A stretch of DNA of 64,000 bases, from positions 6,820,001-6,884,000 of the forward strand of contig CM068762.1 of assembly GCA_035084275.1 (NCBI GenBank). The letters run 5' to 3'. Source of the DNA: Hydrolagus colliei. Taxonomy: Eukaryota. The notes below the pieces were generated by a model. The model had not been told where the DNA came from and did not search any database. It saw only the letters and a program-made list of their open reading frames with translations. The position numbers and the translations under genes were made by a program. Of this stretch, positions 1-48,219 are shown piece after piece; position 1 is the stretch's first letter, and the number at the start of each line of letters is the position of its first letter.

Positions 1-3000
1 GAACTCGTGACTCCTTGAATGTTTCCTGGATTGAAAGCGATGGACGGAGGGATGACTATGTAATCCGTCTTCTGGACTTTGGGTCGAGCACAACGTTGAA
101 AGAAGCTGTCATTCGAAATGACTCTATAAACCATTCCTTTCAAAATTTGACGGCAGGGAAAAAATTTACTGTTGCCATTTTTACTAGAGCAGATCTATAC
201 AATTCAACAGTGGCCACTGCTACAGACTGGACATGTATGTATCTTTCAGATCCTTTTAATTCAGGTTTCTGCATTTATCTATTGCCGGACTGTAGAAATT
301 TTATCGTGTCCAACCAAAAAAGCCGTTTTCCATGTTTTATTATTGATGGTAAACAGAGAATATCCAAGTATTGACTGTTATGAAACAAATCTTCCCGGAC
401 AGTAAAAGCTGAGCATTTTGGTAGAGATCATGAGAAATTGGTTTCATGTTTTCTGTTCTATATAAATTATTGGAGCTATGTGCCACTATCAGCGAGCAGG
501 ACCCCAAATTCACATGAAAGAATGTTTCTTTGGTGGAGACTAATTGGATGAACAACTTTGCACAACTCTCTCTTAACTCTCTTTCTGCAGATCCATCGAC
601 AGCAATGAATTTGTCGATTGACAATACGAGATCGCCGAATACCTTGTGTGTTTTCTGGAATAAAAGTAATGGAGAAAGGGATGATTATATTATCAGTCTT
701 CAAGAGTTTCAATCATCAATCACGCTCCAAGAAACTGTCATTGGAAACGCGTCCATCGATCATTGCTTTCACCTTCTTGTGCCAGGCGTAAAATATTCAA
801 TTGGAATTATCGCAAGAGCTGGCCCATATAATTCCTCCATAGCAAATGATGCAGACACGACATGTAAGTGTGAATACGGTCTAATACTAGAATTGCAAAT
901 GACAATCTCGTCGCTGAAGCATTAAGGGTTTAACAACTAGTTGCGTAGGCAATTGGCTACAATGGATTAATAATAACTGACATGGTTGAAAGTGGCTTTA
1001 GAAGATAATGCATTGTTTACTACAAAGCAGCAGATCGAGGACGTGCTTTGAGATACTAGTATGAGCTTCAAAATACACTTGTCTTTCGATGGAAAGCTCA
1101 ATCAATTTGCAAACATCAGGACTCATTCTCACGTTTCCATCTCCAATGATGTCGTTAAATATGTTCACAAGTACCAACTTAGTGGAACTCACATTTATTT
1201 GCATCTTTACAGACCCTTCAAAACCAACCAACCTGACGCTTCAAAATAGTGGAACTCGTGACTCCTTGAATGTTTCCTGGATTGAAAGCGATGGACGGAG
1301 GGATGACTATGTAATCCGTCTTCTGGACTTTGGGTCGAGCACAACGTTGAAAGAAGCTGTCATTCGAAATGACTCTATAAACCATTCCTTTCAAAATTTG
1401 ACGGCAGGGAAAAAATTTACTGTTGCCATTTTTGCTAGAGCAGATCTATACAATTCAACAGTGGCCACTGCTACAGACTGGACATGTATGTATCTTTCAG
1501 ATCCTTTTAATTCAGGTTTCTGCATTTATCTATTGCCGGACTGTAGAAATTTTATCGTGTCCAACCAAAAAAGCCGTTTTCCAAGTTTTATTATTGATGG
1601 TAAACAGAGAATATCCAACTATTGACTGTTATGAAACAAATCTTCCCAGACAGTAAAAGCTGAGCATTTTGGTAGAGATCATGAGAAATTGGTTTCATGT
1701 TTTCTGTTCTATATAAATTATTGGAGCTATGTGCCACTATCAGCGAGCAGGACCCCAAATTCACATGAAAGAATGTTTCTTTGGTGGAGACTAATTGGAT
1801 GAACAACTTTGCACAACTCTCTCTTAACTCTCTTTCTGCAGATCCATCGACAGCAATGAATTTGTCGATTGACAATACGAGATCGCCGAATACCTTGTGT
1901 GTTTTCTGGAATAAAAGTAATGGAGAAAGGGATGATTATATTATCAGTCTTCAAGAGTTTCAATCATCAATCACGCTCCAAGAAACTGTCATTGGAAACG
2001 CGTCCATCGATCATTGCTTTCACCCTCTTGTGCCAGGCGTAAAATATTCAATTGGAATTATCGCAAGAGCTGGCCCATATAATTCCTCCATAGCAAATGA
2101 TGCAGACACGACATGTAAGTGTGAATACGGTCTAATACTAGAATTGCAAATGACAATCTCGTCGCTGAAGCATTAAGGGTTTAACAACTAGTTGCGTAGG
2201 GAATTGGCTACAATGGATTAATAATAACTGACATGGTTGAAAGTGGCTTTAGAAGATAATGCATTGTTTACTACAAAGCAGCAGATCGAGGACGTGCTTT
2301 GAGATACTAGTATGAGCTTCAAAATACACTTGTCTTTCGATGGAAAGCTCAATCAATTTGCAAACATCAGGACTCATTCTCACGTTTCCATCTCCAATGA
2401 TGTCGTTAAATATGTTCACAAGTACCAACTTAGTGGAACTCACATTTATTTGCATCTTTACAGACCCTTCAAAACCAACCAACCTGACGCTTCAAAATAG
2501 TGGAACTCGTGACTCCTTGAATGTTTCCTGGATTGAAAGCGATGGACGGAGGGATGACTATGTAATCCGTCTTCTGGACTTTGGGTCGAGCACAACGTTG
2601 AAAGAAGCTGTCATTCGAAATGACTCTATAAACCATTCCTTTCAAAATTTGACGGCAGGGAAAAAATTTACTGTTGCCATTTTTGCTAGAGCAGATCTAT
2701 ACAATTCAACAGTGGCCACTGCTACAGACTGGACATGTATGTATCTTTCAGATCCTTTTAATTCAGGTTTCTGCATTTATCTATTGCCGGACTGTAGAAA
2801 TTTTATCGTGTCCAACCAAAAAAGCCGTTTTCCATGTTTTATTATTGATGGTAAACAGAGAATATCCAACTATTGACTGTTATGAAACAAATCTTCCCGG
2901 ACAGTAAAAGCTGAGCATTTTGGTAGAGATCATGAGAAATTGGTTTCATGTTTTCTGTTCTATATAAATTATTGGAGCTATGTGCCACTATCAGCGAGCA

Positions 3001-6000
3001 GGACCCCAAATTCACATGAAAGAATGTTTCTTTGGTGGAGACTAATTGGATGAACAACTTTGCACAACTCTCTCTTAACTCTCTTTCTGCAGATCCATCG
3101 ACAGCAATGAATTTGTCGATTGACAATACGAGATCGCCGAATACCTTGTGTGTTTTCTGGAATAAAAGTAATGGAGAAAGGGATGATTATATTATCAGTC
3201 TTCAAGAGTTTCAATCATCAATCACGCTCCAAGAAACTGTCATTGGAAACGCGTCCATCGATCATTGCTTTCACCTTCTTGTGCCAGGCGTAAAATATTC
3301 AATTGGAATTATCACAAGAGCTGGCTCATATAATTCCTCCATAGCAAATGATGCAGACACGACATGTAAGTGTGAATACGGTCTAATACTAGAATTGCAA
3401 ATGACAATCTCGTCGCTGAAGCATTAAGGGTTTAACAACTAGTTGAGTAGGGAATTGGCTACAATGGATTAATAATAACTGACATGGTTGAAAGTGGCTT
3501 TAGAAGATAATGCATTGTTTACTACAAAGCAGCAGATCGAGGACGTGCTTTGAGATACTAGTATGAGCTTCAAAATACACTTGTCTTTCGATGGAAAGCT
3601 CAATCAATTTGCAAACATCAGGACTCATTCTCACGTTTCCATCTCCAATGATGTCGTTAAATATGTTCACAAGTACCAACTTAGTGGAACTCACATTTAT
3701 TTGCATCTTTACAGACCCTTCAAAACCAACCAACCTGACGCTTCAAAATATTGGAACTCGTGACTCCTTGAATGTTTCCTGGATTGAAAGCGATGGACGG
3801 AGGGATGACTATGTAATCCGTCTTCTGGACTTTGGGTCGAGCACAACGTTGAAAGAAGCTGTCATTCGAAATGACTCTATAAACCATTCTTTTCAAAATT
3901 TGACGGCAGGGAAAAAATTTACTGTTGCCATTTTTGCTAGAGCAGATCTATACAATTCAACAGTGGCCACTGCTACAGACTGGACATGTATGTATCTTTC
4001 AGATCCTTTTAATTCAGGTTTCTGCATTTATCTATTGCCGGACTGTAGAAATTTTATCGTGTCCAACCAAAAAAGCCGTTTTCCATGTTTTATTATTGAT
4101 GGTAAACAGAGAATATCCAACTATTGACTGTTATGAAACAAATCTTCCCGGACAGTAAAAGCTGAGCATTTTGGTAGAGATCATGAGAAATTGGTTTCAT
4201 GTTTTCTGTTCTATATAAATTATTGGAGCTATGTGCCACTATCAGCGAGCAGGACCCCAAATTCACATGAAAGAATGTTTCTTTGGTGGAGACTAATTGG
4301 ATGAACAACTTTGCACAACTCTCTCTTAACTCTCTTTCTGCAGATCCATCGACAGCAATGAATTTGTCGATTGACAATACGAGATCGCCGAATACCTTGT
4401 GTGTTTTCTGGAATAAAAGTAATGGAGAAAGGGATGATTATATTATCAGTCTTCAAGAGTTTCAATCATCAATCACGCTCCAAGAAACTGTCATTGGAAA
4501 CGCGTCCATCGATCATTGCTTTCACCTTCTTGTGCCAGGCGTAAAATATTCAATTGGAATTATCGCAAGAGCTGGCTCATATAATTCCTCCATAGCAAAT
4601 GATGCAGACACGACATGTAAGTGTGAATACGGTCTAATACTAGAATTGCAAATGACAATCTCGTCGCTGAAGCATTAAGGGTTTAACAACTAGTTGCGTA
4701 GGGAATTGGCTACAATGGATTAATAATAACTGACATGGTTGAAAGTGGCTTTAGAAGATAATGCATTGTTTACTACAAAGCAGCAGATCGAGGACGTGCT
4801 TTGAGATACTAGTATGAGCTTCAAAATACACTTGTCTTTCGATGGAAAGCTCAATCAATTTGCAAACATCAGGACTCATTCTCACGTTTCCATCTCCAAT
4901 GATGTCGTTAAATATGTTCACAAGTACCAACTTAGTGGAATTCACATTTATTTGCATCTTTACAGACCCTTCAAAACCAACCAACCTGATGCTTCAAAAT
5001 AGTGGAACTCGTGACTCCTTGAATGTTTCCTGGATTGAAAGCGATGGACGGAGGGATGACTATGTAATCCGTCTTCTGGACTTTGGGTCGAGCACAACGT
5101 TGAAAGAAGCTGTCATTCGAAATGACTCTATAAACCATTCTTTTCAAAATTTGACGGCAGGGAAAAAATTTACTGTTGCCATTTTTGCTAGAGCAGATCT
5201 ATACAATTCAACAGTGGCCACTGCTACAGACTGGACATGTATGTATCTTTCAGATCCTTTTAATTCAGGTTTCTGCATTTATCTATTGCCGGACTGTAGA
5301 AATTTTATCGTGTCCAACCAAAAAAGCCGTTTTCCATGTTTTATTATTGATGGTAAACAGAGAATATCCAACTATTGACTGTTATGAAACAAATCTTCCC
5401 GGACAGTAAAAGCTGAGCATTTTGGTAGAGATCATGAGAAATTGGTTTCATGTTTTCTGTTCTATATAAATTATTGGAGCTATGTGCCACTATCAGCGAG
5501 CAGGACCCCAAATTCACATGAAAGAATGTTTCTTTGGTGGAGACTAATTGGATGAACAACTTTGCACAACTCTCTCTTAACTCTCTTTCTGCAGATCCAT
5601 CGACAGCAATGAATTTGTCGATTGACAATACGAGATCGCCGAATACCTTGTGTGTTTTCTGGAATAAAAGTAATGGAGAAAGGGATGATTATATTATCAG
5701 TCTTCAAGAGTTTCAATCATCAATCACGCTCCAAGAAACTGTCATTGGAAACGCGTCCATCGATCATTGCTTTCACCTTCTTGTGCCAGGCGTAAAATAT
5801 TCAATTGGAATTATCGCAAGAGCTGGCTCATATAATTCCTCCATAGCAAATGATGCAGACACGACATGTAAGTGTGAATACGGTCTAATACTAGAATTGC
5901 AAATGACAATCTCGTCGCTGAAGCATTAAGGGTTTAACAACTAGTTGAGTAGGGAATTGGCTACAATGGATTAATAATAACTGACATGGTTGAAAGTGGC

Positions 6001-9000
6001 TTTAGAAGATAATGCATTGTTTACTACAAAGCAGCAGATCGAGGACGTGCTTTGAGATACTAGTATGAGCTTCAAAATACACTTGTCTTTCGATGGAAAG
6101 CTCAATCAATTTGCAAACATCAGGACTCATTCTCACGTTTCCATCTCCAATGATGTCGTTAAATATGTTCACAAGTACCAACTTAGTGGAACTCACATTT
6201 ATTTGCATCTTTACAGACCCTTCAAAACCAACCAACCTGACGCTTCAAAATATTGGAACTCGTGACTCCTTGAATGTTTCCTGGATTGAAAGCGATGGAC
6301 GGAGGGATGACTATGTAATCCGTCTTCTGGACTTTGGGTCGAGCACAACGTTGAAAGAAGCTGTCATTCGAAATGACTCTATAAACCATTCTTTTCAAAA
6401 TTTGACGGCAGGGAAAAAATTTACTGTTGCCATTTTTGCTAGAGCAGATCTATACAATTCAACAGTGGCCACTGCTACAGACTGGACATGTATGTATCTT
6501 TCAGATCCTTTTAATTCAGGTTTCTGCATTTATCTATTGCCGGACTGTAGAAATGTTATCGTGTCCAACCAAAAAAGCCGTTTTCCATGTTTTATTATTG
6601 ATGGTAAACAGAGAATATCCAACTATTGACTGTTATGAAACAAATCTTCCCGGACAGTAAAAGCTGAGCATTTTGGTAGAGATCATGAGAAATTGGTTTC
6701 ATGTTTTCTGTTCTATATAAATTATTGGAGCTATGTGCCACTATCAGCGAGCAGGACCCCAAATTCACATGAAAGAATGTTTCTTTGGTGGAGACTAATT
6801 GGATGAACAACTTTGCACAACTCTCTCTTAACTCTCTTTCTGCAGATCCATCGACAGCAATGAATTTGTCGATTGACAATACGAGATCGCCGAATACCTT
6901 GTGTGTTTTCTGGAATAAAAGTAATGGAGAAAGGGATGATTATATTATCAGTCTTCAAGAGTTTCAATCATCAATCACGCTCCAAGAAACTGTCATTGGA
7001 AACGCGTCCATCGATCATTGCTTTCACCTTCTTGTGCCAGGCGTAAAATATTCAATTGGAATTATCGCAAGAGCTGGCTCATATAATTCCTCCATAGCAA
7101 ATGATGCAGACACGACATGTAAGTGTGAATACGGTCTAATACTAGAATTGCAAATGACAATCTCGTCGCTGAAGCATTAAGGGTTTAACAACTAGTTGCG
7201 TAGGGAATTGGCTACAATGGATTAATAATAACTGACATGGTTGAAAGTGGCTTTAGAAGATAATGCATTGTTTACTACAAAGCAGCAGATCGAGGACGTG
7301 CTTTGAGATACTAGTATGAGCTTCAAAATACACTTGTCTTTCGATGGAAAGCTCAATCAATTTGCAAACATCAGGACTCATTCTCACGTTTCCATCTCCA
7401 ATGATGTCGTTAAATATGTTCACAAGTACCAACTTAGTGGAATTCACATTTATTTGCATCTTTACAGACCCTTCAAAACCAACCAACCTGATGCTTCAAA
7501 ATAGTGGAACTCGTGACTCCTTGAATGTTTCCTGGATTGAAAGCGATGGACGGAGGGATGACTATGTAATCCGTCTTCTGGACTTTGGGTCGAGCACAAC
7601 GTTGAAAGAAGCTGTCATTCGAAATGACTCTATAAACCATTCTTTTCAAAATTTGACGGCAGGGAAAAAATTTACTGTTGCCATTTTTGCTAGAGCAGAT
7701 CTATACAATTCAACAGTGGCCACTGCTACAGACTGGACATGTATGTATCTTTCAGATCCTTTTAATTCAGGTTTCTGCATTTATCTATTGCCGGACTGTA
7801 GAAATTTTATCGTGTCCAACCAAAAAAGCCGTTTTCCATGTTTTATTATTGATGGTAAACAGAGAATATCCAACTATTGACTGTTATGAAACAAATCTTC
7901 CCGGACAGTAAAAGCTGAGCATTTTGGTAGAGATCATGAGAAATTGGTTTCATGTTTTCTGTTCTATATAAATTATTGGAGCTATGTGCCACTATCAGCG
8001 AGCAGGACCCCAAATTCACATGAAAGAATGTTTCTTTGGTGGAGACTAATTGGATGAACAACTTTGCACAACTCTCTCTTAACTCTCTTTCTGCAGATCC
8101 ATCGACAGCAATGAATTTGTCGATTGACAATACGAGATCGCCGAATACCTTGTGTGTTTTCTGGAATAAAAGTAATGGAGAAAGGGATGATTATATTATC
8201 AGTCTTCAAGAGTTTCAATCATCAATCACGCTCCAAGAAACTGTCATTGGAAACGCTTCCATCGATCATTGCTTTCACCTTCTTGTGCCAGGCGTAAAAT
8301 ATTCAATTGGAATTATCGCAAGAGCTGGCCCATATAATTCCTCCATAGCAAATGATGCAGACACGACATGTAAGTGTGAATACGGTCTAATACTAGAATT
8401 GCAAATGACAATCTCGTCGCTGAAGCATTAAGGGTTTAACAACTAGTTGCGTAGGGAATTGGCTACAATGGATTAATAATAACTGACATGGTTGAAAGTG
8501 GCTTTAGAAGATAATGCATTGTTTACTACAAAGCAGCAGATCGAGGACGTGCTTTGAGATACTAGTATGAGCTTCAAAATACACTTGTCTTTCGATGGAA
8601 AGCTCAATCAATTTGCAAACATCAGGACTCATTCTCACGTTTCCATCTCCAATGATGTCGTTAAATATGTTCACAAGTACCAACTTAGTGGAATTCACAT
8701 TTATTTGCATCTTTACAGACCCTTCAAAACCAACCAACCTGACGCTTCAAAATAGTGGAACTCGTGACTCCTTGAATGTTTCCTGGATTGAAAGCGATGG
8801 ACGGAGGGATGACTATGTAATCCGTCTTCTGGACTTTGGGTCGAGCACAACGTTGAAAGAAGCTGTCATTCGAAATGACTCTATAAACCATTCTTTTCAA
8901 AATTTGACGGCAGGGAAAAAATTTACTGTTGCCATTTTTGCTAGAGCAGATCTATACAATTCAACAGTGGCCACTGCTACAGACTGGACATGTATGTATC

Positions 9001-23500: not shown

Positions 23501-26500
23501 CTTTGCACCTCCAAACTTGTGTCCTCTTTTACTGTCTTACTGTGTGTTAAAATATTGTTCTGGGTTTATTTTTTTCAATCCCATTTAAGGACTTCATACT
23601 GAAGTCATGTAACTCAATGGTTAAAGCACTCGCCTTACAAGCGCGAGACCTGTATTTGAATCCAGGCAGGTCAGAGCGAAACCTTGGGCAAGTTTCCTAA
23701 CTCCACATGCCTAATAATAATTCCTCAAAAAAAAACACATTAATAAAATTGGTCATTTCAATCCACGACTGCTCGTGGGACACTGCTGTGCGCAATTGGC
23801 TGGCGCGTATTGTCCACAAAATGTACAGTTAATTCACTTTATAGTATATCCTGTGAGACGTCTAAAAGACATGAAAAAGCGCTATATCAAATGCAAGGAT
23901 TATTATGATTATATCAAGGTTCTTAGCTGCAACTATCTTTGTACTCCATTTCACTTCAATCACAATGACTGTCAATGTCATTTGGTGGTGGTGTTTTTAT
24001 ATTATAGTGCTGGAGTTGGTCGTTCAGGCAGTTTTATTGCACTCGATTGTTGTATGTATCAGATGGCAACCAAAGCGACCGTGGATGTGTTTGGCCAAGT
24101 TTACAGAATGAGACGGCAGAGAACAATGATGGTTCAGACATTGGTATGTTACACACAGTCTGTCTTACATTAACTGCCGTCGCTGTGTTACACGCTTACT
24201 TTGTATCTGAATTATCCTGAAAGTACATCTGAAAGGAGTATACATTTTATTAATAAGACTGGTGTCTGCCTGCCTGGCTCCAAGACACTACCAACATGTG
24301 GCATTATATAAATACAAGTTGTTGTTGTATTGTCAGAGGTTCCATTCTTCACATGAGATGTTAAACAAGTATCTTATCTGGCTATTCTGTCATTGGTATA
24401 ATCTGAGTAACAAAATGCAAGAATTTCAAATTGAAAGTGATGAAATTGTCCAATATTATTATGTTAAGAAATTGTTTAAAATTGACCAGCATTTCTCATG
24501 TTTTTCAGGATCAATATGTGTTGGTGCATGCCTGCATTCGCCACATCATTTCATCAATCAAAGAAAAACATGTAAAGTAAGCCATACTAATATATATTTT
24601 ACCTATCCTCCTTTGGACGTTCTTACAGCCATTGCGTATTGGTAAGGGATCAGGCACAAAGCCTTCTCAAGGCATAATCCAGATGTGAAATATATGAACT
24701 CACACCAGTTCCACTGCAGTTCTGGGACAGAAGTTGCCAGAAGTGCTGACTTTCTGATGAGACATTTCATCAAAGTCCCGTCTGCCTGTTCGGGTGTCCT
24801 TTGGATGAGATTCCCAGTCATTACCACAGCATTTTGTGCGTAAAATCTCATGACGTGCTTTGAGGTATCTCGATATAACTCACTGTACCAAATGCAAGGA
24901 GTATTATTGAAGGAAACAAGCTAGTGAGATTGTACACAGGGATGAAAAAACGGTGCAGTTGTGCTTGAATGACCTTTTCTGTGAGGTAATGTCACAACTC
25001 CGTGCGCAAGGCAGTGAAATCATTATCTGAACAGTCACGTTGGGACCCGAGCAAAGGGGAGGAGCAGGATAGGCAGGCGGGGAGGGGAGGGAGAGAGTTG
25101 GGAGGGGAATAGAAGTCACAATCCGAGGCGCTCCGAGACATTATTCCTCATGAGGACAGCGCCATATAACTCCAAGTTGTTGTTCTAATTGTTATAATTG
25201 CTTCTCTTTCTTTATAGAAGAAAAAATTGTGTGCGGCTGACTGACTTCCCTGTGCACTGCTCACGTTTGGCTGCAAACTCAAACATGGGTTTCTTAGAAG
25301 ATTTTGAGGTGCGAATTGGAAAAAAAGGTTTCACTGTTTTAGCAATTAAATCACTATATCAAATCCAAGGACCACTATTATTATCATCGGGAACACATTG
25401 AAGCCTATGTATTGCCATTCATAATGAAATGTCAAAGCTCATTTGAAACGTAATTGTCGTTTCTCCTGTTTCGCTCGGTTGCAGCAAAATCCCTGTTCCT
25501 GGTGTTCTTTTTTTTGGGTGAGGAATACACTTTGTAGCTGGAGCTGCGTATGTTCTGAAGATTGCCACGAGGTGGAGCTGCTCAGAGTTGTCAGATTGAC
25601 ACTCCTCGCAATGTGATCCGCAAAGCAACAGCACTGCACTGTGCCTGCATATCTGAAAAGAGATCATGATCTCGCCAGCGCAGTACGATACAATTGACAT
25701 TGAATTGGTGTTGGCGCCTTTCGCAACAGGAGGACGTCTCAAAAAAGTGTGACGATGCTGAATGGGGAGATGAACGCCACATGGAGCGTGACCAAAAGTC
25801 GCCTCTATTATCTAAAAAAATCCTAATTTGTTTAAAGACTTATTAGACATTAGACAAGACTTATTTACATTGTAATGGAATCACACCTTTTTGGTCACCC
25901 TCTACTAATGCATGTTGTACGCACGCATCATCGTCGGCCTTCCCAGCTCCTCCCTTCACAGGCTGCAGATTATTCACAACTCTGCAGCTCATGTCCTCTC
26001 CCGCACTAGGCTCCGCGACCACATCACTCCCACCCTCGCCCGTCTCCACTGGCTCCCCATCCCCCAGAGGATCGAATTCAAGAGCCACGTCCTCACCTTC
26101 AAGGCCATTCACGGCCTTGCCCCTGCCTATCTCTCAGACCTGCTGTCTCCCTATCAGCCCTGCCCGCACCCTCCGCTCAGCAGGCTCTGGCCTGCTCCAC
26201 ATCCACCGCCTTAACCACCCCACCATCGGTGGCCGGGCTTTCAGCCTCTCTGCTCCCACACTGTGGAACTCCATCCCGCAATCCCTTCGCCTCAATTCCT
26301 CTCTTTCCTCCTTCAAGGCCGGTCTCAAGATCTTTCTCTTCCACCGCGCCTTCTGCTCCCCTCCGAACTCTTTCCCCTCTCCTACTCTCCTTCCCCTTCC
26401 CCCTACCCCAACCCTTTCCCCCCTGCTCGGGTCCCGACCTGATTGCTCAGCGCCTTGGGACCTCCCAACGTGAAAGGTGCTCTAGAAATGTAATTTTGTT

Positions 26501-29500
26501 GCTGTTGTTGTTGTTAGTCGTGCAGAGTTGAATGGCCTGAGATTTAAAGTCATGATACATTATAGATGTACTGCATCCCATTATTTTGCTTGCAAGAGTC
26601 AATCTGACATGCCTCCACTGTGAGGCTTGGAGTTTCTTCACAAGTTCCCCTCTTGCCCACCACCTAGTGGGCACTTGTAGATGGTTTTTTTGTGGCCGGC
26701 CTCTCAGTTGAGGGTGTGGAGATGAAAACATAACAGAATAATAGTGGCAACAAACAGAGAGCATATTGCATTTGTGTTTGTTTATAGTTTTGAATGTATC
26801 AAACTCAGTTATAGTATTTCCTATTTTGAAAATACAGGTATACAAATTTCAATGATGCATTTCGGTTTTCATTCTCACTGCAGGTGTCATCCTCAAGTCA
26901 TAAATTTGAATTGGAAGCATTATATTGTAAATTAGTATCCCAAAAGATATGTCAGTAATACTTGTTTGTGGTAGTGTTTCTAATAATACTATACGTTGTT
27001 CTTTCGGCGACTCTGTATACCAAGCAATATAGGAATCCAGTTGTTAGTCGATTGGTGGATCCCTTATCCGGGGGAATAAATAGTTCCTTCAAAAAATAAT
27101 AAATTGGTCACCTCAATCCATGACTGTTTTTGTGACACTGCTGTGTGTTATTGGCTGTCACATTTCGCCAACAAAATATACAATCAATTCACCTTTCAGT
27201 ATATTTTGTGAAGTGCTTTGAGATGTCTCCAATGCGTGATAAGGTGCTATATCAAATGCAAGGATGATTATTATTATTAAATACCGCCCTCCCTCCACCC
27301 CCGGACTATGTTCAAATTCAAACCAGAAAGAAAGTGCATTGTAGAATTTGTCCTTCGCCCTGACATAACGAGAGACTTTAGTGATCATTTGTCAATAAAA
27401 AAAAGATTTGTTTTTGTCTTGAAGAATGCACAACCTACGATCATCACATTAAATCATACTTTTAATAAGATTGTCAACTTGAGCTTTTAAAAAAAAATTT
27501 ACTTGGACGTTATTGTGTGGTAAACGCTGGGTTTGTGAACAAGTTTAATAAATTAAAATCAAAGCAAAATGACACATAATCTTTTCAATATCATCGGCTT
27601 CTTATTACATTATAAAAGATTTATGGATGAATAATTACAAGGGTTTTTTTAAGCTCCTATTTTTAAATTAACATCTGCATTTAACTGATGTTTGTTCTGA
27701 TTCCTTTGTAGTTCCTAGGACAGGCAGGGAGAAACCAGCCAAAAACTGTAGGCCTGCTGCCTGGCAATGCAAATAAGAATCGCTACAAAGATGTTGTGCC
27801 ATGTAAGTTGTGTTTCTGTACTCCTTACTGTCTTTGTCCCAAATTGCTTCCCACAGGCATCGTTCTGCAGTGAGAAGTTAAATCGAGGTCCTGTCTTCCT
27901 GTTCCGGTGAACTCTAAATGTCCCATGGCACTGTTCGAAAAGAGAAGGGAATTCCTCTCTCCCAATGTTTCTCTCTTCCAATCCCTCAAATAAAATTGGC
28001 CACTTGCTTCGTGGCTGTTTGTGGGACCGCGCTTTGCTCAAATTGGCCGCCTCGTTCGCCCACGAAACACAGTCACGACACTTTAGAAAGATAATAATAA
28101 TCCTGTGAAGTGCTTTTGTCCCTAAGTGAAAGTCACTGTACCAATTATAAGGATTATTACTATTATTTTTCCCTGAGTGTTGTATAGATATTTTGAGCAA
28201 AGCTTACGGCTGCAGGCTCGTTAGCAAAATATTCCCTGAGACACACAAGTTGATTGAGGTGACAGATGTCAGCACTCGAAGGTGAGACACATTTTGGTCT
28301 CGGCACCTAGATGTCAGCTTGCCTCAATCTGTAGTGCTCTCTCACCTTGAGAGTAGAACGTGACCCCCAGGTTGACACACTGATAGAACTCAGCCCGTTA
28401 CATGTGCTGGCCTGTAGGCAAAATGTCAAACCGAGGTGAATGTTAAAGAGCCTGCTATTACTATTCAAACAGAAAAGGCAGTTTCCCCCAGTGTACAAAC
28501 TAAAATGGTTACAAATGTTTCTCTTATCTGCTATATATATAATATATATATATAGGTGTAAAGGATTATGTAAGGAATTTAATGTATGTTGATTTTGATT
28601 TACTTTGTGTTTTTGCAGACGATCACTCTAGAGTTAAGTTGCCACCTTCTTTCAATGATCCTTACTCAGATTATATCAATGCCAACTTTATTGCGGTGAG
28701 TTCTCTGCAACTTTTATTGTTATACAGTATCAGGTGTATGATATGAAGTCGATGCCTTTCAAAGGAAAGTTAATTATTTATTCAATTTACATTGCAATTG
28801 AAGTCTCAATGGAATCCGATAACCTCCGGGCTGGGCTGTAAGTGCATTCACTGTGAAGCTACACCTGCCAACACGGCTCCGCCAATGCCTTGAAATCCCA
28901 CTTGTTCAGAAGAAGCCAATGTACTCTCCTTCCGAAGCTTTGGAATTCTCTCCTTCAATGCCTCCATCATGCCCCCTCCTTTCAGGTTACGTTTCTCTTC
29001 GACTTTGCTCATGTTCACCTCCTCCCTCCCCTCGATTCGGTATTATGCTCCCCCATTATTAAGTGCACTAACATACTGCCCCAGTTACAGGGGGCTGAGG
29101 AAACCCAAGTTCTTGTTTTTTCCTGTTGTCTCATGATCACAAGATTGGTTGGCTGAAGAACACCCATTGGCCCATTTCATCTCATCCCTCCACCCACCCT
29201 CCCACTCCCATTCCTGCAACAAGCTACTTTATAAATCCATCCCAGTGCTCTGGCCTCAACCACCTTTCCTGGCAACCTTTTCCAGTTGTTAATTCCCCTT
29301 TAAGAAAATAATTACGCTGTGAGTAAAGATCTGAGCCACCTCAAAATATCCCAGGGGATAGACAGCAGAAAGGGTGCTGCAAATTTTCAAAGACTGACAA
29401 AAGAAAACAAAAAAAAAGAGTACATGATAAGAGAATCTACTCTCATGTTTAGTGTACAGACACTTTCTGGTCTGTAACTGAACCATTCTTTTAATTTATA

Positions 29501-32500
29501 ATGTCCTTCATTGGTAAACACTATAAACTCTCAGTGTCAGTGTCTATAACTGAAGGACACGTTGGGGTTTCAATCTCATAGTCTAGGCTGATGGCTCCAA
29601 TGTAATGCTCGCTGGCTGTTGTTGCATTGTTGGAGTGGTCGTCATTAGGATGAGACCTTATATTCATATAAGGTGTTGCCTGGTATATTGTTAGGCTATA
29701 TTGCTAATACAGTTGAGTTTAGATCCCTGGACATTAACCGCAGGCTGCGCCTTGTTTTGGTCAGGCCACATTTGCAATTCTGGTTACCATGAATTATGCC
29801 TTGAGATAACTTGCGGAAACCGCACAGGCAAGCCTTGCTCTTCATCAATCGCATCTCATCCCCAAATGTAGGGCTACAATTCAGAAAATGAATACATCGC
29901 TGCGCAAGGACCACTGAAACATACCGTGGTGGACTTCTGGACAATGATATGGATGCAGAATGTGTCCATCATTGTCATGTTAACACGGTGTGAGGAGAAT
30001 GGCAAGGTAAGACCATGCAGTGCTGATGGGTGAAGATAATGAAGAGATGCTGGATGTTCCTTATCTTAAACACTGGTTATCTTGCAGGTTTGCTAAAATG
30101 ATGTCCATACAACGTCGACACTGATAGAGAACTTGTTGTACGGTACTGGTGTTCCAGTTACTAGAAGTCTTAGCTCGGAATATAAACACTCCACCTATGA
30201 ATGCGTGATCCTGCCATAGCAGCCTTGATCCTGCCTTGATCCTGCCACAGCGCAGATGGGGAGAGAGAAGGGTGGGAGATGTACTTCATTGTTGGAGGCA
30301 TGGTCCTTCCAATGAAGGAAGGTTAAACCAAGGTTTTGTTCACCTGGTGAACATTAAAGATCATTAAGTGATGCTATTCAAAAAAAAACATCTCCTAGCA
30401 ATAACATCCGCAAAATACATAGGTAGGATATACATGGTAGAAAGCTGGGTATTAAAGACATTTATTCTGTGGCTTCCACTGACACAAATCACCCAAGGCT
30501 TCATCTCTAGCTTGTGGTTTATGTCGCTAATGTGTATTGCGTGATATTGCGTGATATGTAATGTGCAAGCAATTTTCTGTTTTTTTCGCTTTCGCGTTAA
30601 ATAACCATTATCAAAAACATGTGGATTGCAGCAAAAATGTGAGGAGTATTGGCCCTTGAACAGGAACCCTCAGCTGTTTGGTAACATTCTTGTTCAAGTC
30701 GTATCGCAAAACGTGTACGCCGAGTACACAGACAGACAATTTAAAGTTACTCACGTGAGTATTCCTGTTTTATATGCACTCCTTGCTATCCCACATGGAG
30801 GGCGCTGTATAAACACATGTTTTTGTTGTTGTTATACTCCACTCAATGTAAAAGCAAGCACTGTTTTGACGGTAGAATGCTTCAAGTACAATTCCTCAAA
30901 TTATGAGAACAAATGGGCCAAAGAACCTTCTTCAACTGAACGGTCCAATGATGTTCAGCTTTGTTACTATTTTGTTACTACATTTTTAACTTTGTTACTA
31001 GGATGTCACTTTCTTAATACATCTTTAGACTTGATTACTATTTTGTTTCTTTTGTTACTACCATTTTAACTTAGTCACTATTTCGCTGTAAACCTAAACT
31101 TTTCTCCTGATGCGGAACAAAGTGACCAACGTTGATGGCTTAAGTTTTTCGTTACCAGGTGCACCACCGAATGGAGAGGAACATTTCTCACTTACATTTT
31201 GGGGGCTGGCCAGATCACGGTGTGCCTAGCTCCACCGATTCAATCATAAGTTTTGTGACTGATTTCAGACATCATGTCCACTCCATCAAGCCACCAGGGC
31301 CCACAATTGTGCACTGCAGGTAAGGATGCAACCAGTGGAAAATCCTCCAGTAATTGTATTGTATATAATTATTATTACAGTGTTGGGGGAGCACTACATT
31401 ATCGGAGCTGAGGTCCTTTGGATGAGACGTATCCATCCAAGGTCCTTCTGCCTGTGTCTGTTAAAAATCCTATTCAAAACGAACAGAGGGTTTCTCTGGG
31501 TATCCTGACCAACAATCCCCACCCCCATCCCCAGAGAAGATGGGTCATTCACTTCATGTGGACATTGCCTTATGCAAATTAGCTGCAATATACCTATATA
31601 TAAAAAATCTTTGTAGTACTTTACAGTAAAATCCTATTATGTACCATAAGACTTCCTCCCATTGTGAAAAGCACTATATCAAATGCCAGAATTATTGTCA
31701 TTATCAACTCAATAGTTATGAACGTTGGATATATCACTCCACACTGTGATGTACAATATTTGCATCCAGAGCTTTCCACGTCAGTAGAAATACTCAATCT
31801 GCCTATTGTGACCTCAGTTTCAACCTCTCATCTGTCGGAAAGCATTGGTTGTCAGCTTAGAGATCAATGTTCTAATATAGGTTCCCTGAACCTCCTGCCC
31901 CACCATTGGCTGTCGGACATTCAGCATCTCTGCTTCCACACTCTGGACCTCTATCCTATAAACCCTTCGCTTCACCCCCTCTCTTGCCTCGTTTATATCC
32001 AGTCTGAAGACTTTCCTCTTTGACTATGCCTTCAGCCACCCTCCCACCCCCACTGCCACACTCCCAGCTCTCCACCCCTCCTGACCCCCAACTCCCAGTT
32101 GGGGTCCAAAAGCTCCTGACTGTCCAGCGACCTGGGAAATCTTTACGACTTGAAGGACACTCTAGAAGTATAATTTGTTGTTGAACCCGTAACCATTTAA
32201 CATGCTAGTTTAATTACAAGATGCTAACTAAAAGTCTACATCGATTCTCTCAGTTGACAGAATATAACATGTATATCTCTGTTTTGTACTTCAGTGCTGG
32301 AGTAGGTCGAACGGGCACATTCATTGGTCTAGACTGTCTGCTGCAACAGATCAAGAATGAACAAACTATCAACGTGTTTGAAATGGTTCAAAAAATGAGA
32401 CAAAACAGATGTTTTATGGTCCAAACTCTGGTATGCTCCAAACAAAAGTGCACTCATCAATCTATGTCTCAATTTTCGGACAACTAGACATATTGTGCCC

Positions 32501-33220
32501 AGCTAAATCAAAGGACCTTGGTTTCAGCTTGTTTAACGTATTGGATATGATAGCATTCAGAAAAATCTTGTATTTATTCCTCTATCTGATCCAGGCACAT
32601 CATCAATGGAGGAGCTTTCAAGTATTCCAATCTCACCTTCCAGTATTCCAAACCAAAACCCCTTTGCTTCACCCCCCTCCCACTCCATGCTTTAAGATCC
32701 ATCTGTTCAATTGCAATTTGTGTCATCTACCTCCCACCCCTCCACCACCCCCACTCCCCATCCCTCTTCACTTTAGCCCCCAGCCCCCAAAGCATTGCCT
32801 TCCAGCTTGCAAAGCAATGTGCTTTGAGATATCCTCTCGATGCATTAATATAAATCGTTGCTATTGTTCACATACAACAGTTTAGCTGCTGAATAAGAAA
32901 TGTGTGGTTACTCCCAGTTAGTGTGTGGTAAATGAGTGGGTGTGAAGGGTTGGTTACACCTCATGGGTCTGCCAAGTCTTGATCAGACTTCCCAGCTCTT
33001 CTCCATCAGGGTTTAATATGCGGGAATGTTGTGAGGATCGATAGCAGTGATAATTCTGGCAATAATTGTCATTCTGCCTTGTTTTTCAAGCGCAGCCAAA
33101 AGGTGAATTGAAAATGAAACTAACATTCTCATGTTTTTTTTCTACTTCTTTTCTTAGGACCAGTACATATTCCTGCATGTGTGCCTCGGAAATATCCTTA
33201 CAAACCTATTGAACAACTAG
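1..33220 (+). CDS. PTPRV: Receptor-type protein tyrosine phosphatase, R3-like (PTPRV/OST-PTP-like), 5'-incomplete, 41 coding exons visible: at least 23 FN3 + TM + two PTP domains
   Basis: Manual splicing gives one open frame with compatible phases at all 40 introns and a TAG at 33218-33220. The RPTP call is firm. The PTPRV symbol is less certain and rests on the FN3-only visible ectodomain, two PTP domains and the position directly upstream of an LGR6-like gene on the same strand. Confidence 0.8.
13451..13944 (+). mobile_element. 5'-truncated CR1 LINE (ORF2 C-terminus, 3' UTR and tail) inserted in the last array intron
   Basis: ORF 13462-13845 ([30 protein letters not shown]...[16 protein letters not shown]) is typical of the CR1 ORF2 end, followed by an (ATTCTATG)n tail. 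It interrupts the array motif aacaa|ctagtt that is contiguous in the other units. Confidence 0.93.
15150..15721 (+). mobile_element. Degenerate L2 LINE 3' fragment
   Basis: Translates to [23 protein letters not shown]...[12 protein letters not shown]; ends in tail tgaaaggcact...aatgtaattttg(ttg)n. Left boundary approximate. Confidence 0.8.
15744..16049 (+). mobile_element. tRNA-derived SINE, near full length
   Basis: A box tagctcagtgg, B box ggttcaattc, core ctgtttgtgggacactgctg, tail gcgctatatcaaatgcaaggatt(att)n. Confidence 0.85.
17152..17257 (+). CDS. RPTP transmembrane exon
   Basis: tttcacag|...AAA AG|gtaaat, phase 1 to 2. Encodes [35 protein letters not shown]: 21 hydrophobic residues followed by a basic stop-transfer. 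Alternative in-frame acceptor at 17158. Confidence 0.88.
17796..17834 (+). CDS. RPTP 39-nt juxtamembrane mini-exon
   Basis: Pyrimidine tract then taaag|C AAA GAT...CCA AG|gtaagt, phase 2 to 2, encoding [13 protein letters not shown]. The AAG acceptor is weak. Confidence 0.65.
18245..18565 (+). mobile_element. tRNA-derived SINE, near full length
   Basis: Same head, core and tail as 15744-16049, with an internal (AT)n expansion. Confidence 0.85.
18659..24576 (+). CDS. PTP domain 1, 8 exons
   Basis: Exons 18659-18752, 19580-19670, 21031-21107, 21869-22003, 22143-22265, 23121-23281, 24008-24143, 24509-24576. Motifs [64 protein letters not shown]. Confidence 0.94.
19458..19573 (+). mobile_element. 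SINE 3' fragment abutting a splice acceptor
   Basis: gtttcgcccac...tctgtgaagtact...atatcaaatgcaaaga(tta)n followed directly by ttacag and the exon at 19580. Confidence 0.75.
23602..23911 (+). mobile_element. tRNA-derived SINE, near full length
   Basis: Same family head, core and tail. Confidence 0.82.
25218..33220 (+). CDS. PTP domain 2, 8 exons, ending at the stop codon
   Basis: Exons 25218-25308, 27712-27802, 28619-28695, 29872-30006, 30632-30754, 31159-31319, 32295-32430, 33158-33220. Motifs [64 protein letters not shown]; ends NLLNN-TAG. Confidence 0.94.
25925..26514 (+). mobile_element. L2 LINE 3' fragment
   Basis: [14 protein letters not shown]...[21 protein letters not shown]...[14 protein letters not shown], then after a frameshift [19 protein letters not shown]; (ttg)n tail. 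Confidence 0.9.
31885..32182 (+). mobile_element. Degenerate L2 3' fragment
   Basis: Similar to 26200-26514, including the tail tgaaggacactctagaagtataatttgttgttg. Confidence 0.6.
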
Positions 33221-33262
33221 AGCTTTGCTGAATTGCTCTTCCACTTGCCAAAACTCCATCTC

Positions 33263-33350
33263 CGTCAATTTACAGCATATTCTGTGAAGCACTTTGAGAC
33301 GTCTAGAAGACGTGAATAGCGCTATATCAAATGCAAGGATTATTATTATT
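33263..33350 (+). mobile_element. SINE 3' fragment in the putative RPTP 3' UTR
   Basis: tattctgtgaagcactttgagacgtctagaagacgtg...atcaaatgcaaggatt(att)n about 40 nt after the stop codon. Confidence 0.8.
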
Positions 33351-47768: not shown

Positions 47769-47953
47769 ATGATGCCCATTTGCTGTGGCTTTGCCCTGCT
47801 CCTCGCTGCTGCCCTCGTTGCCTCTGCCACCCCCAGCCCCTCTTGCCCAGCTCACTGCCACTGTGAAGAGGATGGGATCTTGCTGTGGGTGGACTGTTCA
47901 GAACTCGGGCTCGACAACCTGCCTGCAAACCTCAGCCCCTTGACATCCTACCT
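47769..47953 (+). CDS. LGR6: Coding exon 1 of leucine-rich repeat GPCR LGR6 (signal peptide and LRRNT cap); no further exon recognised in the window
   Basis: [62 protein letters not shown] with phase-2 donor CT|gtgagt. Clear LGR4/5/6 N-terminus; EDGI and CSELGL favour LGR6 over LGR5. Confidence 0.85.
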
Positions 47954-48219
47954 GTGAGTGCACCTACCTCTGATACTTCCTGTGTCCATCTCCTTCTCTC
48001 TCCACCCCCCACCCCACCCTCTCTCACCCCCTCTCTCTCTCCCTCTCTCTCTCTATATATAGATAACTATAGGCATAGGTCACTTTTTGTTGAGAAAAAA
48101 TGTACAATTTGGTTGAAATCTTTTACTCAGTCGCTCAGATACCTGTAGCACAATATGTATTAGTTTGTTTAACCACCCACCCACCCAATGTGTTTGAAAC
48201 TGGTTCTCGGATGCTGCGC

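What the first reader, a model, noticed from the sequence alone, without database searches (positions are those of the whole stretch)
1..33220. Giant receptor phosphatase: recently amplified FN3 rod joined to two apparently active PTP domains
Seen: one spliceable frame joins at least 23 FN3 exons, a TM segment and two motif-complete PTP domains. Known: R3 RPTPs (PTPRB/H/J/O/Q) have FN3 ectodomains made of divergent repeats and a single PTP domain, while tandem-domain RPTPs usually have an impaired D2. Inference: a copy-number-expandable, heavily glycosylated ectodomain with two catalytic sites is an architecture I do not recognise. It could act as a length-tunable cell-surface phosphatase, where ectodomain size controls exclusion from cell contacts as described for CD45 and CD148.
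Basis: partly seen in the sequence, partly recalled or inferred. Interest (0 to 1): 0.85.

Follow-up and report, generated by a model that had tools for sequence, protein, structure and literature searches.

The report
Shark PTPRV gene with amplified FN3 exons
This is a cartilaginous-fish copy of the known receptor phosphatase gene PTPRV (OST-PTP), unusual in that its second phosphatase domain still looks active and a two-exon fibronectin cassette has recently been copied many times.

Summary
On the + strand, 40 exons (one cut by the window start) have AG/GT splice sites, fitting phases and no internal stop. They are 23 FN3 exons, a transmembrane exon, and two seven-exon PTP domains, each preceded by a juxtamembrane exon. 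The FN3 rod is a 1251-bp tandem unit of two exons plus two introns. Eight core units differ at 1-15 of 1251 bases.

The architecture is not unknown. It is PTPRV/OST-PTP, annotated in birds, reptiles, amphibians (up to 2912 aa) and mammals as FN3 repeats plus two PTP domains. An older Callorhinchus RefSeq model has the same layout. With Callorhinchus as proxy, both domains fall in the PTPRV clade (98/93).

Two differences are real:
- **Second domain.** In 8 of 8 tetrapod PTPRVs examined, the second domain has lost the four catalytic signatures. The window and Callorhinchus keep them all.
- **Membrane-proximal domain.** No PTP_tm domain was found.

Recent FN3 amplification also occurs in newt PTPRV and shark PTPRJ. 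No RNA run was available, so a single transcript is not shown.

The parts
1..13377 (+). Tandem array of a 1251-bp unit (FN3 exon A, 356-nt intron, FN3 exon B, 349-nt intron). It runs off the window start. Core units are 99-99.9% identical; the two 3'-most units are older.
1..234 (+). FN3 exon type A, cut by the window start
591..863 (+). FN3 exon type B
1213..1485 (+). FN3 exon type A (Pfam fn3, E 1.3e-08)
1842..2114 (+). FN3 exon type B (Pfam fn3, E 8.3e-06)
2464..2736 (+). FN3 exon type A
3093..3365 (+). FN3 exon type B
3715..3987 (+). FN3 exon type A
4344..4616 (+). FN3 exon type B
4966..5238 (+). FN3 exon type A
5595..5867 (+). FN3 exon type B
6217..6489 (+). FN3 exon type A
6846..7118 (+). 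FN3 exon type B
7468..7740 (+). FN3 exon type A
8097..8369 (+). FN3 exon type B
8719..8991 (+). FN3 exon type A
9348..9620 (+). FN3 exon type B
9970..10242 (+). FN3 exon type A
10599..10871 (+). FN3 exon type B
11225..11497 (+). FN3 exon type A (unit shifted by indels in the intron)
11854..12126 (+). FN3 exon type B
12469..12741 (+). FN3 exon type A, older copy (16 of 273 bases differ from the exon at 1213)
13105..13377 (+). FN3 exon type B, older copy (17 of 273 bases differ from the exon at 1842)
14227..14502 (+). Last, membrane-proximal FN3 exon (A-like, 276 nt; Pfam fn3, E 9.5e-10)
17152..17257 (+). Transmembrane exon (phase 1 in, 2 out)
18659..18752 (+). Juxtamembrane exon before D1
19580..19670 (+). 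D1 exon 1 (pTyr-recognition loop)
21031..21107 (+). D1 exon 2
21869..22003 (+). D1 exon 3 (Pfam Y_phosphatase, E 7e-17)
22143..22265 (+). D1 exon 4
23121..23281 (+). D1 exon 5 (WPD loop; ends with the catalytic Cys)
24008..24143 (+). D1 exon 6 (rest of the P-loop with Arg; first Q-loop Gln)
24509..24576 (+). D1 exon 7 (phase 0 in, 2 out)
25218..25308 (+). Linker exon before D2, a copy of the juxtamembrane exon
27712..27802 (+). D2 exon 1 (pTyr-recognition loop)
28619..28695 (+). D2 exon 2
29872..30006 (+). D2 exon 3 (Pfam Y_phosphatase, E 1.3e-17)
30632..30754 (+). D2 exon 4
31159..31319 (+). D2 exon 5 (WPD loop; ends with the catalytic Cys)
32295..32430 (+). D2 exon 6 (rest of the P-loop with Arg; first Q-loop Gln)
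33158..33220 (+). D2 exon 7 with the stop codon

Best explanation
The stretch is the 3' part of the cartilaginous-fish orthologue of PTPRV (OST-PTP). PTPRV is an R3-type receptor tyrosine phosphatase whose PTP domain was duplicated within the gene before cartilaginous and bony vertebrates split. Shown: the layout is (FN3-A, FN3-B) x 11, then an A-like FN3, a transmembrane exon, a juxtamembrane exon, D1, a linker exon and D2. All splice sites and phases fit. D2 is an exon-for-exon copy of D1, with exon sizes 91, 77, 135, 123, 161 and 136 nt in both. Both domains keep every catalytic signature, whereas the tetrapod PTPRV D2 domains examined have lost them. Inferred: the protein is a single-pass, heavily N-glycosylated surface phosphatase with two potentially active sites. 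The FN3 rod grew by unequal crossing-over between 1251-bp units, including blocks of two units. That growth or homogenisation is younger than the split from the closely related organism B. Because every FN3 exon is phase 1-1, gain, loss or skipping of units keeps the reading frame. Rod length can therefore vary between individuals, species or isoforms.
For: Gene model: 40 exons, all AG/GT, phases fit, 8,111 coding nt. Pfam: fn3 in 3 of 3 FN3 exons scanned and Y_phosphatase in 6 of 6 PTP exons scanned. Orthology: HMMER of D2 exon 5 against 1.84 billion representatives gave Callorhinchus P0001 as best hit, followed among others by alligator, axolotl and tinamou PTPRV. The Callorhinchus RefSeq proteins P0311 (568 aa) and P0429 (1113 aa) are colinear with my exons. 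Identities are 65-87% in D1, 87% in the linker and 67-92% in D2, with the joints where I placed them. Tree of 32 PTP domains: Callorhinchus D1 and D2 plus tetrapod PTPRV D1 and D2 form one clade against PTPRJ, PTPRH, lamprey and R2A domains (98/93). Callorhinchus D2 groups with tetrapod D2 (83/75). Motifs: 8 of 8 tetrapod D2 domains lack the pTyr-loop motif, the WPD Asp, the P-loop Arg and the first Q-loop Gln, while Callorhinchus D1 and D2 keep them. The window does too. All PTPRV D1 domains, both Callorhinchus domains and the window share a Q-loop Leu where PTPRJ, PTPRH and R2A have Glu. Array: 8 core units differ at 1-15 of 1251 sites; the units at 3715 and 6217 differ by 1 site. Organism B differs from the window by about 2-3% in this gene (9 in 443, 11 in 453 and 15 in 546 bases). 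P0429 has the same A,B,A,B,A' order, with A1-A2 92% and B1-B2 89% identical. There are 4-6 N-glycosylation sequons per core FN3 exon. Downstream, an LGR-family first exon lies on the same strand.
Against: No RNA run holds the stretch, so neither expression nor one transcript through FN3, D1 and D2 is shown for this species. The Callorhinchus proteins are pipeline models; I could not see what evidence supports them. Copy number was not checked against reads: the single read-laying run went to D2. The 5' end and signal peptide lie outside the window. D2 orthology with tetrapod D2 has only 83/75 support. Trees holding Callorhinchus D1+D2 together, or D2 with tetrapod D1, are not rejected (p-AU 0.40 and 0.27). 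The tree uses Callorhinchus as a proxy, not the window's own joined protein. Within the core array, 8 of 10 variable exon sites change the amino acid, and exons vary as much as introns. Selection on the young copies is therefore not detectable. The PTP_tm domain of the tetrapod PTPRVs scanned is absent. Motif completeness does not prove activity.
Confidence: 0.8

Rival explanations
1. D2 keeps its motifs but is not a working enzyme in vivo. It would act as a regulatory or substrate-docking module for D1, as the membrane-distal domains of other tandem RPTPs are held to do. Its motifs would be conserved for binding rather than turnover.
For: [quoted passage not shown] The D2 domains of all 8 tetrapod PTPRVs examined are dead, so the gene can work with D1 alone. 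D2 exons are at least as conserved as D1 exons against Callorhinchus. That fits any conserved role, not only catalysis.
Against: All four catalytic signatures are kept in D2 of two distant cartilaginous fishes. The urchin R2A D2 in the same table has already lost the pTyr-loop Tyr and the WPD Asp. Pfam scores of D2 exons equal or exceed those of D1 in 2 of 3 exon pairs.
Confidence: 0.35
2. The long near-identical array is inflated or mis-built by the assembler, and the true gene has only a few A/B units.
For: Units are 99-99.9% identical including introns, a kind of sequence that assemblers handle badly. The P0429 model shows only two A/B pairs. I did not lay reads on the array.
Against: The units are not identical copies. 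They carry 22 variable sites in a higher-order pattern: units two apart are the closest, and the 3' units grow steadily older. An artefactual duplication of one unit would not produce that pattern. P0429 lacks its N-terminus, and I do not know how that assembly was made.
Confidence: 0.1
3. The gene, or most of the amplified exons, is not expressed. It would be a young pseudogene, or an array in which most units are skipped at splicing.
For: No RNA evidence. Human PTPRV is called a pseudogene (PMC8799702, passages read). Nonsynonymous changes dominate among the young copies, 8 of 10. The PTP_tm domain is missing.
Against: There are 8,111 nt of open frame over 40 exons with canonical splice sites. 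Exon identities to Callorhinchus are 65-92%. pN/pS between older and younger FN3 units is 0.40-0.73. The lack of PTP_tm is shared with P0429, so it is a lineage feature and not decay.
Confidence: 0.12
4. It is another R3 paralogue (PTPRB, PTPRJ or PTPRH-like) that gained a second PTP domain independently, not PTPRV.
For: By single exon the best solved structures are PTPRB for D2 exon 5 and PTPRS/LAR for D1 exon 5. The current Callorhinchus entry is named 'alpha-like'.
Against: The PTPRV clade including Callorhinchus D1 and D2 has 98/93 support. The Q-loop Leu is shared. The D2 tail ends at the same place as the alligator and axolotl D2. An LGR-family gene lies downstream. PTPRV, LGR6 and PTPN7 are listed on one chicken chromosome, as candidates without positions (PMC7379350, passages).
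Confidence: 0.04

Closest known systems
PTPRV / OST-PTP (Esp) of tetrapods
   Same: FN3-only ectodomain, one TM and two tandem PTP domains (Pfam on alligator and axolotl). Same clade and same Q-loop Leu. Many FN3 units: by my own FN3 profile, 15 in alligator, 17 in axolotl and 22 in newts. The newt units include some 93-98% identical.
   Different: All 8 tetrapod D2 domains examined have lost the catalytic signatures, whereas here D2 is intact. Alligator and axolotl PTPRV carry a PTP_tm domain (PF18861) before the membrane that is not found here. Here the amplified block is a two-exon A/B cassette, with at least 11 pairs in the window.
Callorhinchus milii XP_007892481 (version 1: 1113 aa, P0429; version 2: 568 aa, P0311, named 'receptor-type tyrosine-protein phosphatase alpha-like')
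   Same: Identical layout: A,B,A,B,A' FN3 units, TM, D1, linker and D2, with no PTP_tm hit. Both domains are motif-complete. Window exons are 47-63% (FN3) and 65-92% (cytoplasmic) identical to it.
   Different: Only two A/B pairs are in the model, 89-92% identical to each other. The window has at least 11 pairs with near-identical protein sequence. The Callorhinchus entry is a pipeline model. In one search, none of the 10 papers listed contained 'PTPRV'; the other matches were not examined.
R3 receptor PTPs (PTPRB, PTPRH, PTPRJ, PTPRO, PTPRQ)
   Same: FN3-only ectodomains. The PTP domains are the nearest relatives of the PTPRV clade in my tree. Shark and stingray PTPRJ also carry 95-100% identical FN3 units.
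   Different: R3 proteins are defined by a single PTP domain (abstract of PMC5336234). That paper's main text does not mention PTPRV (0 occurrences). Its supplementary sequence list could not be opened.
Classical tandem-domain RPTPs (LAR/R2A, CD45, RPTP alpha/epsilon)
   Same: Two PTP domains in tandem after one TM.
   Different: Here D2 is a recent relative of its own D1, inside the PTPRV clade, and not of the R2A D2 in the tree. The urchin R2A D2 in my table has lost the pTyr-loop Tyr and the WPD Asp, while this D2 has not.

Membership tests
PTPRV / OST-PTP | Ectodomain made of FN3 repeats only | tested here: met
   23 FN3 exons in the window; 3 of 3 scanned match Pfam fn3. The part upstream of the window was not seen.
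PTPRV / OST-PTP | Single transmembrane segment between the FN3 repeats and the PTP domains | tested here: met
   Exon 17152-17257 reads as a hydrophobic stretch followed by basic residues and is 59% identical to P0429 residues 482-515. No TM predictor was run.
PTPRV / OST-PTP | Two tandem PTP domains | tested here: met
   Two sets of seven exons with identical sizes; 6 of 6 scanned match Y_phosphatase.
PTPRV / OST-PTP | PTP domains fall in the PTPRV clade | tested here: met
   Callorhinchus D1 and D2, used as proxy for the window and 65-92% identical to its exons, group with tetrapod PTPRV D1 and D2 at 98/93. The window's own joined domains were not built.
PTPRV / OST-PTP | Second domain degenerate (pseudophosphatase), as in the tetrapod members | tested here: not met
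   8 of 8 tetrapod D2 domains lack the four signatures. The window D2 has all of them.
PTPRV / OST-PTP | Membrane-proximal PTP_tm domain (PF18861), present in alligator and axolotl PTPRV | tested here: not met
   Present in P0005 and P0015. tblastn and a profile built from 146 such domains find nothing in 13,400-19,600 (best E 0.25). Also absent from Callorhinchus P0429.
PTPRV / OST-PTP | Lies next to LGR6 (synteny; the mouse and human arrangement is recalled, not from a call) | tested here: inconclusive
   An LGR-family first exon (signal peptide and LRRNT) lies at 47,769-47,954 on the + strand. The best solved match is LGR5, so LGR6 cannot be told from LGR4 or LGR5 with one exon. Chicken PTPRV, LGR6 and PTPN7 are listed on chromosome 26, as candidates without positions (PMC7379350, passages).
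R3 subtype RPTP (strict sense) | A single cytoplasmic PTP domain | tested here: not met
   Definition from the abstract of PMC5336234; two domains are present here.
Classical tandem RPTPs (R2A and others) | D2 related to the D2 domains of other tandem RPTPs | tested here: not met
   The D2 proxy groups with PTPRV domains, not with the one R2A D2 in the tree (urchin).

The most novel reading that the evidence does not exclude
The ancestral PTPRV was a receptor with two working catalytic domains, and cartilaginous fishes still have it. Here that enzyme sits on an FN3 rod whose length changes quickly by gain and loss of a two-exon cassette and may differ between individuals. The tetrapod D2 would then be a datable case of an active PTP domain turning into a pseudophosphatase within one orthologous gene. 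The shark gene would be a natural test of how ectodomain length tunes a surface phosphatase.
Probability: 0.3. Interest if true: 0.6.

Novelty: new variant of a known kind. Interest (0 to 1): 0.4.

Why it matters
PTPRV is the least studied R3-type phosphatase. One zebrafish PTP paper calls it an additional gene of rodents (PMC2933243, passage), and the main text of the R3 evolution paper does not mention it (PMC5336234).

The data here place it back to the common ancestor of jawed vertebrates. They show that its second domain was intact at that stage and decayed on the way to tetrapods. That gives a clean, single-gene system for asking what a membrane-distal PTP domain does before and after it loses catalysis.

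The repeated, very recent growth of FN3 rods is seen here, in newt PTPRV and in shark PTPRJ. It suggests that ectodomain length in these phosphatases is under fast turnover, which bears on size-exclusion models of phosphatase action. These models are recalled knowledge and were not tested here. None of this changes what is known of the family's basic mechanism.

Tried and rejected
- **TRF.** It gave nothing because the unit (1251 bp) exceeds its 500-bp limit. A lag analysis replaced it.
- **Self-BLAST of orthologues for internal repeats.** It returned 0 hits for all 7 proteins. This was an invalid control, because BLAST drops alignments enclosed by the full self-match. redid it unit by unit and found highly similar FN3 units in several of them.
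- **Single-exon searches of solved structures.** They did not discriminate subfamilies: PTPRB was best for D2 exon 5 and PTPRS/LAR for D1 exon 5.
- **First tree, with the Ensembl fragment P0001.** It was weakly resolved, and P0001's D1 part contains intron read-through. It was replaced by the tree with P0311.
  - Rows dropped before the first tree: three Mya pieces, one Trichinella piece and one Lytechinus piece.
  - Rows dropped before the second tree: two axolotl D2 pieces and two Trichinella pieces, all partial envelopes.
- **The search for homologous proteins with alligator D1.** The 120 listed were all tetrapods, so no shark full-length protein was reached.
- **The search for homologous proteins with Callorhinchus D2.** Only Callorhinchus entries were close. 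The length window of the tool may hide long shark proteins.
- **Other hits.** Of its 150 hits, 52 have two or more PTP envelopes. Apart from PTPRV and Callorhinchus, they are R2A-like proteins, PTPRJ/PTPRH-like fragments or invertebrate proteins.
- **Search for a PTP_tm domain.** Negative.
- **Pfam on a 127-aa ORF at 13,462-13,842, on two repeat-like ORFs and on the two juxtamembrane exons.** No family.
- **Selection test on D2 from organism B.** Only 4 exon differences were among the rows shown (3 change the amino acid, 1 silent), and 203 rows were not shown. This is too little to use.
- **The search of earlier findings by words.** Nothing.
- **Papers.** No open text gave the OST-PTP domain count, so '10 FN3 repeats in rodent OST-PTP' stays a recollection. 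My own profile finds 9 in the hamster protein.
- **Not done.** No structure prediction was run. A joined model was barred, and the natural proxies did not need one for the questions asked.

Full report
**What is there**

The window has no N. From base 1 to about 13,400 the + strand is a tandem array with a period of exactly 1251 bases. Identity at that lag is 0.98-1.00 in 250-base windows up to about 9,750, against 0.26-0.28 at neighbouring lags. TRF missed it because its period limit is 500.

Each unit holds two 273-nt exons, which I call A and B, separated by introns of 356 and 349 nt. All 22 complete FN3 exons have AG and GT at their ends, enter and leave in phase 1, and are open. A 23rd exon is cut by the window start. 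Three of three FN3 exons scanned match Pfam fn3 above the curated cut-off.

The last FN3 exon (14227-14502) is an older A-like copy, with 66 of 273 bases different.

**The rest of the gene**

Using orthologous proteins as guides and reading the splice sites directly, I placed these exons:
- a transmembrane exon (17152-17257);
- a juxtamembrane exon (18659-18752);
- seven D1 exons (19580-24576);
- a linker exon that is a copy of the juxtamembrane exon (25218-25308);
- seven D2 exons ending with the stop at 33220.

All 40 exons have canonical splice sites, the phases fit throughout, and the only stop is the terminal one. The coding total is 8,111 nt in the window (the sum is my arithmetic).

D1 and D2 have the same exon sizes: 91, 77, 135, 123, 161 and 136 nt. 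Six of six PTP exons scanned match Y_phosphatase.

In both domains the translations show the pTyr-recognition-loop tyrosine, the WPD aspartate, the P-loop cysteine and arginine, and both Q-loop glutamines. In each domain the P-loop is split by an intron whose junction codon is serine.

Every search was exon by exon or used natural database proteins as proxies.

**What it is**

HMMER of D2 exon 5 against 1.84 billion representatives found 569 proteins at E of 0.001 or better. The best was a 395-aa Callorhinchus milii fragment. Alligator PTPRV (2275 aa), axolotl PTPRV-like (2532 aa) and tinamou PTPRV were also among the hits (names).

Pfam on the alligator and axolotl proteins gives many fn3 matches, one PTP_tm domain and two Y_phosphatase domains. 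A search with alligator D1 listed 120 proteins, all tetrapod and nearly all named PTPRV. They range from 1390 to 2912 aa, including mammals of 1624-1702 aa and newts of 2911-2912 aa.

So a giant FN3 rod with two PTP domains is a widely annotated gene, PTPRV (OST-PTP). Its mouse function in osteoblasts and gonads is reviewed in PMC8799702 (passages read).

A search with the Callorhinchus D2 and a cluster look-up brought in two versions of one Callorhinchus RefSeq entry:
- P0311 (568 aa) is colinear with my D1, linker and D2 exons, with the joints exactly where I put them. Identities are 65-87% in D1, 87% in the linker and 67-92% in D2.
- P0429 (1113 aa, the older version) has five FN3 units in the order A,B,A,B,A', then TM, D1, linker and D2. 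A1-A2 are 92% and B1-B2 89% identical.

That is the window's layout with fewer units.

**Phylogeny**

A tree of 32 PTP domains was built with IQ-TREE (LG+C20+F+G4); four partial envelopes were left out. It puts Callorhinchus D1 and D2 together with tetrapod PTPRV D1 and D2 against PTPRJ, PTPRH, a lamprey R3 protein and R2A domains, at 98/93 support.

Callorhinchus D2 is sister to the tetrapod D2 clade at 83/75. The alternatives are not rejected:
- Callorhinchus D1 with D2: p-AU 0.40.
- Callorhinchus D2 with tetrapod D1: p-AU 0.27.

The second domain therefore arose inside the PTPRV lineage and is not related to the R2A D2 in the tree. One duplication before the split of cartilaginous and bony vertebrates is the simplest reading, but it is not proven. 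The tetrapod D2 clade sits on a long stem (0.52 + 0.39 changes per column).

**What differs from known PTPRV**

- **D2 motifs.** In 8 of 8 tetrapod D2 domains the pTyr-loop motif, the WPD aspartate, the P-loop arginine (now glutamine) and the first Q-loop glutamine (now proline) are gone. The eight are alligator, tinamou, chicken, gecko, Pleurodeles, caecilian, echidna and hamster. Hamster and echidna have also lost the catalytic cysteine. Callorhinchus D1 and D2 keep everything, as does the window.
- **PTP_tm domain.** The PTP_tm domain found in the alligator and axolotl proteins is not found between the last FN3 exon and the TM exon. tblastn found nothing, and a profile of 146 such domains gave a best E of 0.25. 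It is also absent from P0429, so this is a lineage feature and not a gap in my model.
- **Cassette copy number.** The window holds at least 11 A/B pairs.

**The array's history**

Eight core units differ from each other at 1-15 of 1251 sites. Units two apart are the closest (3715 and 6217 differ by 1 site), which suggests the latest events copied two-unit blocks.

Of 22 variable sites, 10 lie in exons (8 change the amino acid) and 12 lie in introns, five of them at an indel edge. Selection on the young copies is therefore not visible. Between young and older units, pN/pS is 0.40-0.73, and exons (94% identical) are better kept than intron 1 (86%).

Contigs of organism B, a close relative, differ from the window by about 2-3% in the D2 region (9 of 443, 11 of 453 and 15 of 546 bases). 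That is more than the core units differ from each other. I infer that the growth, or its homogenisation, is younger than that split.

Recent FN3 amplification is not peculiar to this gene:
- Newt PTPRV has 22 FN3-like units, several 93-98% identical.
- PTPRJ carries units 95-100% identical in the great white shark, 95-99% in the basking shark, and one pair about 96% identical in a stingray.
- Hamster, echidna and chicken PTPRV do not: their best pairs are 36-52% identical.

**Independent DNA and RNA**

No RNA run holds the stretch.

Contigs of a second sample of the same organism (X5) cover 27,600-33,293 with 0, 7, 2 and 4 differences on its four long pieces. None of the nine X5 differences shown lies in a D2 exon, but not all differences are shown.

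**How it most likely works**

Shown: an open, spliceable gene for a single-pass protein with at least 23 FN3 domains and two motif-complete PTP domains. The core FN3 exons carry 4-6 N-glycosylation sequons each.

Inferred:
- It acts as a cell-surface tyrosine phosphatase like other R3-type enzymes.
- D1 is the main catalytic domain. D2 is either a second active site or a regulatory module that still needs its active-site geometry.
- The phase 1-1 cassette lets unequal crossing-over or exon skipping change rod length without breaking the frame.
It rests on recalled work on CD45 and CD148, and nothing here tests it.

**Novelty**

The gene family and architecture are known. The intact second domain in cartilaginous fishes, the missing PTP_tm domain and the size of the A/B array are variations.

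- In a search combining PTPRV with shark-related terms, none of the 10 papers listed (of 3,760 matching) contained 'PTPRV'; the rest were not examined.
- The main text of the R3 evolution paper does not mention PTPRV. Its supplementary sequence list, which I could not open, might.
- PMC2933243 treats ptprv as an extra gene of rodents (passage).

Absence from these searches is not proof that the point is unpublished. Most subscription journals are outside the library.

Noticed in passing
window 47,769-47,954 (+): First exon of an LGR-family receptor (signal peptide plus LRRNT; Pfam LRRNT E 5e-08; best solved match LGR5, E 1e-11). It lies 14.5 kb downstream of the phosphatase stop on the same strand. 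One exon cannot tell LGR6 from LGR4 or LGR5.
   Followed up: partly
window 14,503-17,151 and Callorhinchus P0429: The membrane-proximal PTP_tm domain (PF18861) is present in alligator and axolotl PTPRV, and 146 matching envelopes were found among the fetched proteins. It is missing here and in the Callorhinchus model; the last FN3 exon splices straight to the TM exon.
   Followed up: yes
proteins P0015 (axolotl), P0266 (Pleurodeles), P0274 (caecilian): In the two salamanders the first PTP domain of PTPRV has serine in place of the catalytic cysteine. In the caecilian the P-loop histidine is asparagine. Some amphibian PTPRVs may therefore have no active domain at all.
   Followed up: no
proteins P0072, P0182 (lamniform shark PTPRJ), P0101 (stingray PTPRJ), P0266, P0269 (newt PTPRV): FN3 units 93-100% identical within one protein. 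Recent FN3 amplification recurs in R3-type phosphatases of sharks and newts.
   Followed up: partly
Callorhinchus milii XP_007892481: The older RefSeq version (1113 aa) holds FN3 units, TM and both PTP domains. The current version (568 aa) starts inside the juxtamembrane exon and is named 'alpha-like', which looks like a misnaming of a PTPRV orthologue.
   Followed up: partly
window 13,462-13,842 (+): A 127-aa open frame with no Pfam match lies in the enlarged intron between the last B exon and the last FN3 exon. It looks like part of an inserted mobile element and marks the 3' edge of the regular array.
   Followed up: partly
window 27,791-28,172; 31,611-31,801; 33,139-33,300: Intronic and 3' stretches with summed contig depth of 10^4 to 10^6 in all four runs laid. 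These are very high-copy repeats, probably SINE-like.
   Followed up: no
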